Shown in pieces: positions 42,349 to 47,408 of a stretch of DNA of 47,408 nt (position 1 is the first letter of the stretch; the number at the start of each line of letters is the position of its first letter). Below the pieces are notes generated by a model, which searched no databases, was not told the DNA's origin, and saw only the letters and a list, made by a program, of their open reading frames with translations. The stretch is from Klebsormidium nitens (lineage: Eukaryota; Plantae; Klebsormidiophyceae): contig DF237573.1 of the NCBI GenBank assembly GCA_000708835.1, positions 1 to 47,408 of the forward strand, read 5' to 3'. The position numbers and the translations under genes are program-made.

Positions 42349-42940
42349 GGCTGCGAATTGTGTCCTAACTCAAAAACCTTCTACAGTTTGTATGCAGGGG
42401 TTGCGGCCTGCACAGGCTGCAGGGCGTCAAGGCGCCCTGTTCAAATTCACTTCCAAGTTGTTCTCTCGAGTCTGCACAATGGAAGGCTGTCCATCAAGCT
42501 CAAGAAAAGGCATCTTTAGGGGGCTCTTTCAGAGTCTTCAGGACCCATCCCGGCGATCTGATTGGTCATCTAACTCCGTCACCGTGTTTTCAGACTCTGC
42601 GAGTTCACCGCAGCCTGGATGGTGTTAATTATGGGCCAAATTTAACATCTGAAATGGTCGCCGCTTAACTGCTGCTTAAAAGTTTCAGACCTGGAGAGTA
42701 CGCTAACTTAACCGTCATCTACGATTTTCACTTGTGCCCTTAAAGGGCGACAAGAGGCATCCTGCATGCGGCCTATATTAAATGCACCATATCTACAGGC
42801 TGGTGTCAAGCTGTCAGCCTTGTGATGCTTTCTCATTTGCTGGAGGTTGCATTCGGAGATTGCTGCAAGGCGCTAGGAAAGGTGAGGTGAATTGACCTGA
42901 CAAGTGATGTTACTCCTTGTATACACATGCTGTGGGTGTT

Positions 42941-42986
42941 GCAATGACCTGTAATCGTCCGCAATGACCTGTATTCGTCTGCAATG
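42941..42986. repeat. 20-bp tandem duplication
   Basis: gcaatgacctgta(a/t)tcgtc(c/t) x2 followed by gcaatg. Confidence 0.8.
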
Positions 42987-43019
42987 TTCTCTTGGGGGCA
43001 AGGTACTCTGGTTCTGAGA

Positions 43020-43663
43020 CTACTGAGGGAGCGGCCTGAAGGCAGTATATGTGCATTCTCTAAGGAAGAGCTTCTCCAGCTTAGGACACTTGCATGATAA
43101 AGTCTTGACGGCGAAGCTGAAAGCCAATGTGCATGAAGGAGCTCTCTGCCTGATTCCCTCTCCGTCCACCTGGTTTATGTGAGTCTTATTATTATGAACA
43201 AAGAAATGATTGTCCTGATGGCTGGACAATTGGAGAAACGGCAATGTGATGAAGTAAATTACAATAGGAGTAAGAGCTCCCGAAGCTGACGTCCCTTCCG
43301 GAAGACACTCTTGTTATCTTGAGGACACCCTCCTTTACTGTTGTTGGTTCTGACCGTTCTGCAGTGATTGTACTTGAGGCAGAATCGGGAAACGCAACAT
43401 TTCAACCAGCTGGCAGACTTGTGGAAGTTGTTACAAGAACTAATTAGTACCTTCTTTAAGGTCATTGACTTCACTGTTGTATTTGCAACTCCTCTGAACA
43501 TGACTTTCTGTGCTTTTCCAGGAACTGTTGAAGGTGTCAAGAGGAGTGCTGCCTTCACTGACACGTCGCTGGAGCGACTACTATGCAACTTGGGCCGACC
43601 AGGAGCGATAAGAGAACGTAAGCTCTTACAGTCTCCGATAATCAGTTGCTTCTGAAGTGGCAC
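43020..43663 (-). pseudogene. Possible degenerate RNI-like/F-box-LRR gene fragment
   Basis: Cys-containing LRR-like segments in adjacent ORFs: KQLIIGDCKSLRSL, LKKVLISSCNNF, RQLRELLLL, KCPKLEKLFLREC. No coherent gene model was found. Confidence 0.35.
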
Positions 43664-45745
43664 ACACGTCCAGCTTTATATGTACAGCGGTGGTTCTACG
43701 CAGTGGTTCTACGCAGGTGAACCCCACAGCGCACATGTATGCACTAGACACAAACAGACACCAAGTATCCTTGATGGAATCTGTATCTAGAATCCTCACT
43801 AGACCTTAGTAAGCTCAGACTCGCACACTGGAAGCTGTAGCCACATGTGACAGGTTGTGAATGTAGATTTGTCATGCTGGCAGTCTGAATCTTGCGTCTA
43901 TAAATGCTAATACCCAAGTTTCAAATCTTGATGCAAGTCCGAACGCTAGAGCTTGATTCCAAGATGGAGGACTTGCCCACCAACTACTACACCATCAAGA
44001 CTGGCTTCAATCGCTTCTGCACTGATGGCACATTGCGAGCAGCAATCCCGGAGATTGTGCAGAATGCCACGCGTGCATCCTTCGAAGCTTCAAGCGTTGC
44101 CAACCTGTACGTTCTGCAGTGTTTTGAAAACAACCCGTTGAATCTAGCTTTCGGCCCTCTGGATCAAACGTTTTTCTATCAAGTGATTTCGTCAATCACC
44201 GTAGGTGGGCATGGTCCTGCGAATCAGCTTCCTAATTTCACCCCCTGGCAGTTGCAGCATTTCCGCACCTGACAATCCTACGAGCAGTGCGCGATGAATA
44301 TTTGCAGCTTAGACATCCCATCAACGCCCCGCAGCCGGCTTTTGCATCACGAGCAGGTCATCCGCAGATCTTCAATCGGATAGCCAGACAGTACGTCACC
44401 AACTGCGCCAATAATGTCGCGCAGAATCTAGAAAGAAGAATCAAGGGATATCTGGGCTACAAAGCTGCTAAGTACAGTCTGACACCGCCAAACACTCCTG
44501 CACAGCACCAAGGCGCCTGGCGTAAAATTAGAGAGCGGAAGCTGCTTCGGACAATGGTCGATTTCTTCTACGACCATTTTGTCGTCTTCGACTCGTGGAC
44601 GCTCCCGTCACTTCAGGAGTTTCTTGCTTCCAACCGTGCTGGAATCCAACATTTTGAGGTGCTCTCGATTGCTAGCATGGGGCCTCTTGGTGTTTTCTGG
44701 ACGCAATGGTCGCTTCTTTTTGACAAGTTGATAGCCCGCTTCGGTTTTCCGCGCATGGGGGGCGCCTTTCGAGATCCATTTGCCAACTGGACCGAATGTC
44801 TGACATTGTTACGGCAGTGTCTGCGATCGTTTGAACGACACGGAGGGGAAGCGCACTTCGAAGGACTTCCAGGGTTCCCAAGCTTTTCTCTCCTTCCGTT
44901 GCATTCAGCACGGAAAAAGTACGTGACACTGGATTCTTCTTCGTTGTCGGAGGTTTGCGCATCGACTGGGATATAGCCCGGTCCTGCAAACAATCCATTT
45001 TCAACGCTGTTTGATCTGGACCTAGTGAGGCTCGGGGGACCCGTGAATGGCATTGCAAAGGTCATCCGTCAGATCAAAACGGACGGTGTTGGCGTCAGCG
45101 TGGTTGTGGAGAGGGTGGGGTTGGGGAGAAAGCGGAAGCAGGGACCCGTGCTCTTTGCTGCGCAGAACAACAATCTGCCTGCTGTACCGGATTGAATGGC
45201 GTCTCCCGGATGCCGGATCGTCGGTATCGATCTGGAAAGCGCTTCCTGTTTTACGCGGCTGTTCAAGACGGGGGACAGCATGGTGCGGAGACGCAGCAGT
45301 CGATCAGATGTTCATCGAGAGAGTACCGCGAAATGTCGGGTTTTGCAAGTGCGAATCGACGAACCGTCATCGGGGTGGATGGAGAACGATTTAGAGGTGC
45401 GGGATTGGGCACGTGAAGCCCCTCGTAAAGGCCACGGAACGGTGGATGGTTTCAGCGAACGTCTGGATGCGGAGTTGGCAAAAATGGACCATCTTCTTGC
45501 GTTTTTTGGTCAGAGACGATGGGCGAAATCCCGGTGGGCGGGTTGGATGGGTAAGCAGAGGGCGATGAACACGCTAGCAAGTTGCATTCACGGAGATGCA
45601 GCCCAGCTCGTCGTAGGCTTTGGCGATGGCCGTTTCAACCCACACATTCGTGGTCATCCGCCCGCTGCGGTGAAGGGTCTGAGGCGGGCGTTGACAAGAA
45701 GAGGTCGCATGATTGATGTCAATGAATACATGACTCACCAGTCAG

Positions 45746-46244
45746 GTAAGTGGATTCATTTTTGAAGTTTAATCCAGAAACAACCATGTAAACGTTAAAG
45801 AAGTAGGTGACAGTGTCGGACTATCAAAATATCCGAGTGATACGTTGAAGGTGGCTTCAACCAATGATCTACCGCTCAAATTGAATGTCAAATCGTGTTC
45901 ATTTGGACACTTTCAATATGGTTAATAGACGGGCCACCCAGAAGCCACCCAGAAGCCATCAAGAAAAAAGACTCATCTTTGCCGCTGCCAGATTCAGCCA
46001 TGCCAATTGCCATGCACATTATTTGCAAAATCAGCACGAAACATAATTCTTTGTTCACTAATAACTGCAGCAGATAAACTGAATGAACTTTGAATGGTGA
46101 TGCAGCCGCCGCCATTGGTTGTACAAGTCACTGATGCCAGGTCAAAGAATAGATTTTGATAGATGTTGGCACCGTACTCGGGCTAGTCTCATTCTTTCGA
46201 TCACTGTAAGCGAATGGGATTGAGAAAATATTTGCTTGTAACAG
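45746..46244 (+). other. 499-nt spliceosomal intron within the Fanzor gene
   Basis: Donor CAG|GTAAGT and acceptor tttgcttgtaacag|GTATGC. Splicing joins TSQ to VCSEC, the expected continuation after RuvC-II. Confidence 0.8.
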
Positions 46245-46333
46245 GTATGCTCAGAGTGTTCGACCACAAATCTGCGAGCGACCCATCACTACGTGCGAGA
46301 CGGCGACGGAGCTCGGAGCGCCAGTTACTGGGT

Positions 46334-46712
46334 TAGGCCCCGGAACATGGAATATCGGAATACGGAATACCCATTTTTGGGAGCGGAAGAATCCGGAATA
46401 CCCAAATTTGGGCCTTGGAATACTAGAATACAGAATACAGGGCTCTTCCGAGCATACTACACAAACGACAAACGACGGAAAAATTCTTGACTTCGAAGTA
46501 AAAAGACTTCCAAAGCATGCTTCGAACGGAAGAAGATTGTAAAAGAACTCACACGACAAGCGCACTCCTTTCGTACCTTTCAAAATTGTCAAAAGTCACA
46601 TTTGCGAAACGGAATACAAAATACTTGAGCACCCTGGAATACGAAACACTGCCTTTTTGAAAGCTTGGAATACAGAATACTGGGGGTCAAGTATTCCATG
46701 TTCCGGGGCCGA
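46334..46712. mobile_element. 379-bp hAT-like MITE with a 6-bp TSD, inserted in the Fanzor zinc finger
   Basis: Left TIR TAGGCCCCGGAACATGGAATA vs reverse complement of right end TCGGCCCCGGAACATGGAATA (20/21). CTGGGT is duplicated at 46328-33 and 46713-18. About ten subterminal GAATAC repeats. Precise removal restores the frame SYWVRAC. Confidence 0.92.
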
Positions 46713-46863
46713 CTGGGTGCGGGCGTGTGCCAACCGGCTTTGTCGCATCCGGCACTGGCACCGGGATAGGAATGCTTCGCGTAATATGCTGCCGCATATT
46801 TGGCTTTACCAATATGCACACAACGGAGCCAGACCCGTTGCCATTCCAATAGCACTGAGCTAG

Positions 46864-47100
46864 AATCTTTTGAGCTGCGGCCCGGCGTCTAGGCGGCAAA
46901 CCAGCACACGGAGTCTTTGGTCGCGCGGACGGGTACCGTCCTCCGTGGACACTCGGCGTGGACAGGTACCGCCAGGGTTCCCGCGCGGTACCGACCTGTA
47001 GCGGACGCCGCGTGGACGGTGCCGGTAAATTCACTGAACAGTGACAAGACTGCCGGTTTCCAGCGTTTCCAGTCAATATCGGCCCAAAACCGGCAATCCG
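46864..47100 (+). ncRNA. Candidate Fanzor omega-RNA (fRNA) scaffold
   Basis: Four successive stem-loops directly 3' of the Fanzor stop: 46927-41, nested 46954-47010, 47031-44 and 47051-95. The position matches where TnpB/Fanzor guide RNAs are encoded. Boundaries are unknown. Confidence 0.35.
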
Positions 47101-47281
47101 TCGTCACTTCTGCCATCCCCCCTGAAAAAATAGCCAGCTAGAGTCTTTACATGCGTCGCCAAAGTCCTCTTCTGCCCTTTTCAACCTCCAGACCTCCAGC
47201 CTCATGCCCAACCGTCAGCTTCCATACCTTTGGCAGGTTTTCACCCTTACACTCTACAGTTTTGAGTGCGGTCACAGCGCA

Positions 47282-47408
47282 ATGGACCTCTCAGGCGTGC
47301 ACTCTCAGCTGCAGTCTCTGAAGGTGACCTCAAGGCAGGGCTCTGGGCAAAAAGCTCTGGAAAGGTACAAAGCTTTTGGTATCTTCCAAACTCTCCTTTC
47401 CAGCAAAT
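47282..47408 (+). CDS. Possible start of a further gene running off the window (MDLSGVHSQLQSLKV...)
   Basis: ATG at 47282 with an open frame to the window end. No recognisable motif. Confidence 0.25.
   Translation, partial: MDLSGVHSQLQSLKVTSRQGSGQKALERYKAFGIFQTLLSSK

What the first reader, a model, noticed from the sequence alone, without database searches (positions are those of the whole stretch)
43964..46863. Hidden Fanzor1 RNA-guided nuclease gene, reconstructable from five ORF fragments
Seen in sequence: fragments 43904-44272, 44287-44976, 45192-45416, 45196-45765 and 46657-46863 are collinear pieces of one gene. Removing one intron and one MITE, and fixing four indels and two stops, gives 671 codons. 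The product carries RuvC D (GID[P]G), E (VNEY) and D (RDRNA), plus a CxxC...CxxxxC zinc finger between RuvC-II and RuvC-III. Established knowledge: this motif order, together with FSLLP and TDGV, is characteristic of TnpB-derived Fanzor1 proteins carried by eukaryotic transposons. Inference: this is a fossil copy of a streptophyte-algal Fanzor family with all catalytic residues intact, so a consensus could be resurrected. An internal RKRK (GLGRKRKQG) may be an NLS.
Basis: partly seen in the sequence, partly recalled or inferred. Interest (0 to 1): 0.85.

Follow-up and report, generated by a model that had tools for sequence, protein, structure and literature searches.

The report
Broken Fanzor1 nuclease gene in Klebsormidium
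This is a real but dead copy of a Fanzor1 RNA-guided DNA-cutting gene in the alga Klebsormidium nitens; it is still transcribed and spliced, but it is ordinary, because an active Fanzor1 from this species has already been published.

Summary
The window equals bases 1-47408 of Klebsormidium nitens scaffold DF237573.1. At 43964-46863 (+) it carries one collinear Fanzor1 gene.

The gene is broken by four frame-shifting indels, two in-frame stops and a 378-nt MITE. It also has one genuine GT..AG intron (45746-46244). An intact sister copy (L001, 664 codons, same intron position) confirms each lesion.

A profile of full-length relatives matches solved Fanzor1 structures end to end:
- SpuFz 8gkh, E 2e-48
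- GtFz, E 1e-42
- PpFz, E 2e-35
- TnpB and Cas12f, only about 1e-3

An AlphaFold model of the sister's exon 1 product matches SpuFz at TM 0.63.

Contigs from four public runs reproduce the lesions exactly. They also show the intron spliced out and an upstream spliced leader exon. So the breaks are real and the locus is an expressed pseudogene. It is partly annotated as hypothetical protein KFL_006240080.

Synonymous sites between the window and the sister are saturated while pN is 0.16, so decay is recent relative to their divergence.

No transposon ends were found in the window. It also lacks the 3' RNA element that the sister copies share.

K. nitens Fanzor1 (KnFNuc) is already shown to be active (PMC10530073), and this scan holds 27 other Fanzor notes on this genome. 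Verdict: a new member of a known kind, of low interest.

The parts
42822..42881 (+). Upstream non-coding leader exon of the transcript. Only its 3' part is seen.
   Evidence: Loose contig ends before 43520 match the window at 42855-42879. The donor GT is at 42882. In the run of organism B, an alternative leader exon ends at 43178.
42882..43521 (+). Intron in the 5' leader (GT..AG).
43522..45745 (+). Main exon. It holds the Fanzor1 coding remnant from ATG 43964 to 45741, covering WED, REC, RuvC-I and RuvC-II.
   Evidence: Contigs of four runs cover it with no differences. It aligns with L001 exon 1 along its whole length.
43964..44259 (+). Coding piece in frame 2 (N-terminus, MEDLP...). It ends at a 1-nt deletion.
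   Evidence: hhalign to the family profile, columns 29-106, probability 98.6%. 80% amino-acid identity to the sister.
44263..44973 (+). Coding piece in frame 1 (REC region to the FSLLP motif). It ends at stop TAG 44974-44976.
   Evidence: hhalign columns 119-302, probability 98.3%. The stop is seen.
44977..45192 (+). Coding piece with the TDGV motif and the basic patch RKRK (45127-45138). It ends at stop TGA 45193-45195, which was created by a 3-nt insertion.
   Evidence: hhalign columns 320-358, probability 87.7%..
45196..45233 (+). RuvC-I motif (Asp codon 45229-45231), followed by a 1-nt deletion.
   Evidence: The sister reads GIDPGK here.
45237..45368 (+). Coding piece shifted into frame 0. 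It ends at a 4-nt insertion that restores frame 1.
   Evidence: 77% amino-acid identity to sister residues 426-468..
45376..45741 (+). Coding piece in frame 1. The canonical RuvC-II position holds Gly (GFGDG), and the Fanzor-type alternative Glu codon is at 45724-45726 (VNEY).
   Evidence: phmmer hits to 113 relatives.. The rearranged glutamate is described in PMC10530073.
45742..45745 (+). 4-nt insertion (TCAG) before the splice donor. It puts exon 2 out of frame in the spliced RNA.
   Evidence: Comparison with the L001 donor. The annotated product P0001 reads exon 2 in the wrong frame.
45746..46244 (+). Spliceosomal intron (GT..AG, 499 nt). Its position is shared with all sister copies.
   Evidence: Splice joint in contigs of four runs. 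The same position holds an intron in L001, L003, L004 and L005.
46245..46333 (+). Exon 2, first part (frame 0). It carries the CxxC half of the zinc finger at 46248-46259.
   Evidence: 59% amino-acid identity to sister exon 2, residues 1-29.
46334..46711 (.). MITE inserted in exon 2. It has perfect 19-nt terminal inverted repeats and a 7-nt target duplication, ACTGGGT (46327-46333 and 46712-46718).
   Evidence: The sister has an uninterrupted site. Other copies of its right end occur in other contigs (records 4, 16, 19).
46719..46863 (+). Exon 2, second part (frame 1). It holds CxxxxC at 46726-46743, the RuvC-III Asp codon at 46765-46767 (RDRNA) and the stop at 46861-46863.
   Evidence: hhalign columns 584-625, probability 96.2%. 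86% amino-acid identity to the sister.

Best explanation
The locus is a decayed copy of a Fanzor1 gene. Fanzor1 is the eukaryotic TnpB-derived RNA-guided DNA endonuclease. The copy lies on scaffold DF237573.1 of Klebsormidium nitens.

Its ancestor encoded a protein of about 665 residues. The domain order was WED/REC, then RuvC-I Asp, then the Fanzor-type relocated RuvC-II Glu, then a CxxC...CxxxxC zinc finger, then RuvC-III Asp. One intron sat just after the Glu motif.

The lineage was under strong purifying selection for most of its history. This copy then acquired four frameshifts, two stops and a MITE in the zinc-finger exon.

It is still transcribed from an upstream promoter, with a spliced leader, and its intron is still removed. 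The RNA cannot encode a nuclease, however, because RuvC-I, RuvC-II and RuvC-III now lie in different frames. The annotated 185-residue 'hypothetical protein' KFL_006240080 is an ORF within this pseudogene.

Shown: family membership, the lesions, splicing and past selection. Inferred: loss of function, and that no guide RNA is made here.
For: Genome and coordinates.

Collinear pieces.

Fanzor1 identity:
- The family profile matches SpuFz (E 2e-48), GtFz (1e-42) and PpFz (2e-35). The next best match is 6e-11 (mimivirus L79), and TnpB/Cas12f reach only about 1e-3.
- Relatives carry PF07282 above its cut-off.
- The AlphaFold model of the sister's exon 1 product (pLDDT 77, pTM 0.79) matches SpuFz 9cez at E 5.6e-18, TM 0.63, against TM about 0.2 for Cas12f.

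Intact sister copy and lesion list.

The lesions are not assembly errors. Contigs of four independent runs cover 43520-45748 with no differences and no gaps.

Transcription and splicing: the joint 45745|46245 appears in all four runs, exon depth is 44 against 7.6 in the intron, and there is an upstream leader exon.

Past selection: over 654 codons, amino-acid identity is 73.5%, pS is 0.74 (saturated) and pN is 0.16.

The relocated glutamate matches the description in PMC10530073.
Against: - The runs are only guessed to be RNA. The splice joint argues for RNA, but strand and transcript ends are not resolved.
- No transposon ends and no conserved 3' RNA element were found at this copy. Its origin as a mobile element is therefore inferred from the family, not shown here.
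- A function for the RNA or for a truncated peptide cannot be excluded.
Confidence: 0.92

Rival explanations
1. The gene is intact in the organism, and the frameshifts and stops are errors of the draft assembly.
For: The assembly is a draft scaffold, and indels are a common error type. This is general knowledge; no tool result supports the idea.
Against: Contigs assembled independently from four runs in four studies reproduce 43520-45748 with no differences and no gaps. They also contain the MITE. The deposited gene model stops where the frame breaks.
Confidence: 0.02
2. The locus has been taken over by the host as a non-coding RNA gene, or as a short-protein gene such as the 185-residue KFL_006240080 product or the 229-residue REC-domain ORF. 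It would then have a function unrelated to DNA cutting.
For: Expression is steady across four studies. Splicing is correct, there is a multi-exon leader with alternative first exons, and the locus sits next to a host gene.
Against: The lesions are scattered as expected for neutral decay. The annotated ORF ends in an out-of-frame read that runs into the MITE. No relative shares such a truncated architecture except as a fragment. Pseudogene transcription is common.
Confidence: 0.05
3. The motifs are a chance resemblance, or the gene belongs to another TnpB-like group (prokaryotic TnpB, Fanzor2 or Cas12) or comes from contamination.
For: The single pieces gave no Pfam hit and no PDB sequence hit on their own.
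Against: Profile and fold comparisons place the family with Fanzor1 by more than 25 orders of magnitude over TnpB, Cas12f and Fanzor2. A spliceosomal intron and K. nitens transcripts rule out bacterial contamination.
Confidence: 0.01

Closest known systems
KnFNuc, the Fanzor1 of Klebsormidium nitens characterised by Jiang et al. 2023 (Sci Adv, PMC10530073)
   Same: Same species and same protein family (Fanzor1). It shares the RuvC site with a relocated glutamate and occurs in several genomic copies.
   Different: KnFNuc is reported as intron-less, intact and active (TAM TTA), with 5 copies. This copy has a conserved intron, is broken, and shows no terminal repeats. I could not obtain the KnFNuc sequence, so the degree of relatedness is untested.
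Spizellomyces punctatus Fanzor1 (SpuFz, PDB 8gkh, 9ceu-9cez)
   Same: Full-length profile match (E 2e-48) and fold match (TM 0.63). The FS(L/A)(L/I)P, TDG(V/A)SVSV, DEY-TS, zinc-finger and RD-N motifs all align.
   Different: About 17% sequence identity. SpuFz is intact and acts with a defined omega RNA. The window copy has no recognisable omega RNA region.
Prokaryotic TnpB (ISDra2, PDB 8bf8/8exa) and Cas12f
   Same: Same RuvC plus zinc-ribbon (TNB, PF07282) core and the same RNA-guided mechanism.
   Different: Only the C-terminal 50-70 residues match (E about 1e-3). The canonical RuvC-II glutamate is replaced by Gly here, with the alternative Glu further downstream. The host is eukaryotic, and the gene has an intron.
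Fanzor-only mariner-type elements noted elsewhere in this genome by this scan (for example s1-261756)
   Same: Fanzor1 genes in the same genome, some of them also broken.
   Different: Those are described as bounded by Tc1/mariner-type ends inside giant-virus-like DNA (I did not check this). This copy lies beside a host HAT-repeat gene, has no detectable ends, and has host-like introns.

Membership tests
Fanzor1 | Full-length similarity to established Fanzor1 proteins that exceeds the similarity to TnpB, Cas12 and Fanzor2 | tested here: met
   The profile of relatives matches SpuFz (2e-48), GtFz (1e-42) and PpFz (2e-35) over profile positions 17-630 of 639. Mimivirus L79 reaches 6e-11 and TnpB/Cas12f about 1e-3, and only over the C-terminal part. 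All window pieces align collinearly to that profile.
Fanzor1 | Split RuvC motifs in the order Asp ... Glu ... zinc finger ... Asp | tested here: met
   The codons are at 45229-45231 (D), 45724-45726 (E), 46248-46259 and 46726-46743 (Cys pairs) and 46765-46767 (D). They fall on invariant or nearly invariant family columns D456, E620, C646 and D658.
Fanzor1 | Relocated RuvC-II glutamate: the canonical position holds Gly or Pro, and an alternative Glu lies about 45 residues downstream (PMC10530073) | tested here: met
   The window reads GFGDG at the canonical strand and VNEY about 36 residues later. The family has invariant G586 and near-invariant E620.
Fanzor1 | Fanzor fold (WED, REC, RuvC) | tested here: met
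   Tested on the intact sister's exon 1 product, which is 73.5% identical to the window's codons. Foldseek's top seven matches are all SpuFz, GtFz or PpFz, with TM 0.59-0.63. The window's own product was not folded because it is broken.
Fanzor1 | Eukaryotic genomic host | tested here: met
   The scaffold is DF237573.1 of K. nitens GCA_000708835.1. A spliceosomal intron is confirmed by a splice joint.
Fanzor1 | Adjacent conserved, structured guide RNA (omega RNA / fRNA) region overlapping the 3' end of the gene | tested here: not met
   The fold of window 46780-47140 is no better than shuffles (z -0.56). The 60-90-nt element conserved 100-190 nt after the stop in L001, L003, L004 and L005 is absent from the window. 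The sister's 3' flank is structured (z -2.89). This concerns the integrity of the system in this copy, not the protein's family.
Fanzor1 | Carried within a transposon (terminal repeats, target duplication, or transposase nearby) | tested here: inconclusive
   No bounding inverted repeats were found. Homology to the sisters stops at the coding sequence. There is no synteny. The ends may have eroded. The full genome was not available for collecting copies.
Fanzor1 | Intact reading frame and RNA-guided nuclease activity | tested here: not met
   Four frameshifts, two stops and a MITE, confirmed in independent contigs. Activity cannot be tested with these tools.
Fanzor1 | Nuclear localisation signal | not testable with these tools
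   The basic patch RKRK (45127-45138) is conserved as KKRK in the sister and lies in a low-confidence loop of the model, residues 392-402. This is a lead only.
MITE (non-autonomous DNA transposon) | Short element with terminal inverted repeats, a target-site duplication, no coding capacity, and several copies | tested here: met
   The element is 378 nt long, with perfect 19-nt repeats and a 7-nt duplication. An empty site is seen in the sister. Other copies of its end occur in unrelated contigs. The superfamily was not assigned.

The most novel reading that the evidence does not exclude
This copy and its sisters (L001, L003-L005) would form a separate Fanzor1 lineage of Klebsormidium-like algae that has not yet been described. 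The lineage would differ from the intron-less, mariner-type KnFNuc elements in these ways:
- a fixed intron
- host-like leader exons
- no terminal repeats
- very strong long-term purifying selection
- its own conserved 3' RNA element containing a T-arm-like hairpin (GGAGG-TTCAAAT-CCTCC)

On this reading, the Fanzor persisted as a resident, perhaps domesticated, gene rather than as a jumping one, and the window holds one member that died.
Probability: 0.2. Interest if true: 0.5.

Novelty: new member of a known kind. Interest (0 to 1): 0.25.

Why it matters
It matters little on its own. Fanzor1 is an established family, and an active Fanzor1 from this same species has been published and used for editing. 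This scan has already noted many Fanzor loci in this genome.

What this work adds:
- It corrects an annotation. KFL_006240080 is a fragment of a Fanzor1 pseudogene.
- It gives a clean example of an expressed, correctly spliced Fanzor pseudogene, dated relative to a MITE insertion.
- It points to an intact intron-bearing sister gene with a conserved 3' RNA element in public data. That sister would be the sensible object for any functional work.

Tried and rejected
- Pfam on the six window pieces found no family, even at E 10.
- phmmer of three pieces against PDB sequences gave only chance hits.
- The search for homologous proteins:
  - The 229-residue piece found nothing, which the length filter explains.
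  - The sister's exon 1 product found only itself and one fragment.
  - The family profile found two proteins without names.
  - The taxonomic spread and the K. nitens paralogues could therefore not be listed.
- tblastn of the pieces against the rest of the window found no second copy.
- ARAGORN and Rfam on L001-L005 and L002 found no tRNA and no known RNA family, despite the T-arm-like hairpin.
- An exact-pattern scan of metagenome contigs for the conserved 3' element gave 0 matches.
- A search for terminal inverted repeats around the gene, in the window and in the sister loci, found nothing convincing.
- tblastx of the flanks against the sister loci found no synteny.
- The KnFNuc sequence or accession was not available. 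No supplements are held, and no other paper gives it.
- Two alternatives were considered and rejected: assembly error and bacterial TnpB contamination (intron, transcripts, profile ranking).
Full report
**What is there**

A three-frame read shows one frame open from 44275 to 45765 apart from two stops, preceded by an ORF in another frame from 43904. On their own the pieces match no Pfam family and no solved structure by sequence. Identification therefore needed relatives.

**Relatives**

I ran a phmmer search with the RuvC-I/II piece (45196-45765) against 1.84 billion representative proteins. It gave 113 hits:
- The best hit, P0001 (99% identity), is the deposited gene model of this locus: GAQ90305.1, hypothetical protein KFL_006240080 of Klebsormidium nitens.
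- Its contig is DF237573.1 of GCA_000708835.1, and the window's coordinates equal the record's coordinates.
- The second hit, P0002 (608 aa, 58% identity), comes from a 2970-nt Logan contig, L001.
- About two dozen hits of 640-750 residues at 22-36% identity are full-length proteins. Those tested carry PF07282 (Cas12f1-like TNB domain) above its cut-off.

**Family**

I built a profile from 23 of these full-length relatives (A1). It matches PDB chains as follows:

| Chain | E-value | Extent |
|---|---|---|
| Spizellomyces punctatus Fanzor1 (8gkh) | 2e-48 | profile positions 17-630 of 639 |
| Guillardia theta Fanzor1 | 1e-42 | – |
| Parasitella parasitica Fanzor1 | 2e-35 | – |
| Mimivirus TnpB-like L79 | 6e-11 | C-terminal 50-70 residues only |
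| TnpB, Cas12f and other Cas12 | about 1e-3 to 1e-6 | C-terminal 50-70 residues only |

The window's pieces align to the same profile in order:

| Window piece | Profile columns | hhalign probability |
|---|---|---|
| 43964-44269 | 29-106 | 98.6% |
| 44275-44973 | 119-302 | 98.3% |
| 44977-45192 | 320-358 | 87.7% |
| 46657-46863 | 584-625 | 96.2% |

The RuvC-I/II piece was the phmmer query that found these relatives.

The canonical RuvC-II position reads Gly (GFGDG), and a conserved Glu follows about 36 residues later (VNEY). This is the relocated glutamate described for Fanzors in PMC10530073.

I predicted an AlphaFold model of the sister's exon 1 product (592 aa, pLDDT 77, pTM 0.79). Its seven best PDB matches are all SpuFz, GtFz or PpFz (E 5.6e-18 to 3e-13, TM 0.59-0.63). 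Cas12f follows at TM about 0.2.

**The intact sister and the lesions**

L001 carries an uninterrupted gene:
- exon 1 at 209-1984 (592 codons)
- a GT..AG intron at 1985-2470
- exon 2 at 2471-2689 (72 codons plus stop)

Exon 2 encodes CxxC, CxxxxC and RDRNA.

Aligning the window to L001 gives:
- 1 nt missing after 44259
- an in-frame 3-nt deletion after 44627
- TAG at 44974-44976
- 3 extra nt making TGA at 45193-45195
- 1 nt missing after 45233, within GID(P/L)GK
- 4 extra nt near 45366-45369
- 4 extra nt (TCAG) at 45742-45745, directly before the donor

Exon 2 of the window (from 46245) is in frame with the sister up to 46333. There a 378-nt MITE sits (46334-46711). It has perfect 19-nt inverted repeats and a 7-nt duplication, ACTGGGT, which occurs only once in the sister. 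After the MITE the reading continues through CxxxxC and RDRNA to the stop at 46861-46863.

By arithmetic the ancestral reading would be about 669 codons.

**Are the lesions real, and is the locus expressed?**

Logan contigs of four runs from four studies were laid on 43500-47408. Three runs are of organism A and one of organism B, under coded names.
- They cover 43520-45748 with no differences and no gaps, and they contain the MITE. The breaks are therefore not assembly errors.
- All four runs show a joint that skips 499 nt, from 45745 to 46245, with GT..AG ends.
- Exon depth is about 44 against 7.6 in the intron.
- So these are RNA-derived contigs, and the intron is still spliced.
- Contigs begin at 43520-43522 with unmatched letters. 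These map to 42855-42879, next to a GT donor. In organism B they map instead to 43150-43178. The transcript therefore has a spliced leader with alternative first exons.
- The leader arises in the 500 nt between this locus and a divergently oriented host gene with HAT/Suf repeats.
- Because of the TCAG insertion, the spliced RNA reads exon 2 out of frame. That is what the deposited 185-residue model does.

**History**

I compared the window and L001 piece by piece, each piece in its own frame and with nothing joined. Over 654 aligned codons, amino-acid identity is 73.5%, pS is 0.74 (saturated) and pN is 0.16. Most of the divergence therefore happened under strong purifying selection, and the disabling changes are late.

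Nucleotide homology between the two copies stops exactly at the coding sequence.

Three further loci come from two JGI metagenomes. L003 is degraded. L004 and L005 carry one frameshift each. All three have the intron at the same position.

**What is missing here**

The four sister loci share an element of 60-90 nt, at 85-93% identity, located 100-190 nt after the stop. It contains the hairpin GGAGG-TTCAAAT-CCTCC, and conservation ends at ...CCTAGTTCA. The sister's 3' flank folds better than shuffles (z -2.89). This is what a guide-RNA scaffold ending at an element boundary would look like, but that reading is inference.

The window has no such element, and its 3' flank folds no better than shuffles (z -0.56).

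No inverted repeats bound the gene, and the flanks show no synteny with the sister loci. Whether this copy arrived as a transposon therefore cannot be shown from the window.

**Comparison with what is known**

Jiang et al. 2023 (PMC10530073) tested a Fanzor1 of K. nitens, KnFNuc. It has 5 copies, no introns and TAM TTA. It cleaves in vitro and gives up to 2% editing in human cells.

This scan holds 27 Fanzor notes on this genome, including Fanzor-only mariner-type elements in giant-virus-like DNA (unchecked by me). So the scan has met Fanzors in this genome before, on other DNA.

The present copy differs in three ways: it has a conserved intron, it has host-like leader exons, and it has no detectable ends. 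I could not obtain the KnFNuc sequence to measure the distance.

**Verdict**

The locus is an expressed Fanzor1 pseudogene: a new member of a known kind, of low interest.

Noticed in passing
L001:2795-2879; L004:7083-7173; L005:2865-2955; L003:6615-6675: A non-coding element is conserved at 85-93% identity 100-190 nt downstream of the stop in all four sister Fanzor loci. It is more conserved than the coding DNA. It contains a T-arm-like hairpin (GGAGG TTCAAAT CCTCC), and conservation ends at CCTAGTTCA. It is not a tRNA by ARAGORN and matches no Rfam family. It may be the guide-RNA scaffold or right end of this Fanzor lineage. It is absent from the window.
   Followed up: partly
window 46864-47140: The stretch that a neighbouring note (s1-344204) calls a stem-loop cluster or omega-RNA candidate folds no better than dinucleotide shuffles (46780-47140, z -0.56). 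It has no counterpart in the sister copies.
   Followed up: partly
window 42350-43521: The pseudogene transcript has a spliced non-coding leader with two alternative first exons, ending at 42881 or 43178. It starts within about 500 nt of the divergently oriented host gene, a 708-aa HAT/Suf-repeat protein. A shared bidirectional promoter may explain why a dead gene stays expressed.
   Followed up: partly
window 45280-46336: The deposited gene model GAQ90305.1 (KFL_006240080, 185 aa, hypothetical protein) is an internal ORF of the Fanzor1 pseudogene. Its last 30 residues are an out-of-frame read of the zinc-finger exon that ends in the MITE.
   Followed up: yes
window 46609-46713: Contigs in three runs match only the right 105 nt of the MITE, with 7 differences, and then run on into unrelated sequence on both sides. 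So the MITE family has other, transcribed copies in this alga.
   Followed up: no
L003:3577-3854 and L004:3753-4069: Two sister copies from one metagenome share about 320 nt (68% identity) directly upstream of the start codon. This stretch is not shared with L001 or the window. It could be a 5' element end or a promoter of a sub-lineage.
   Followed up: no
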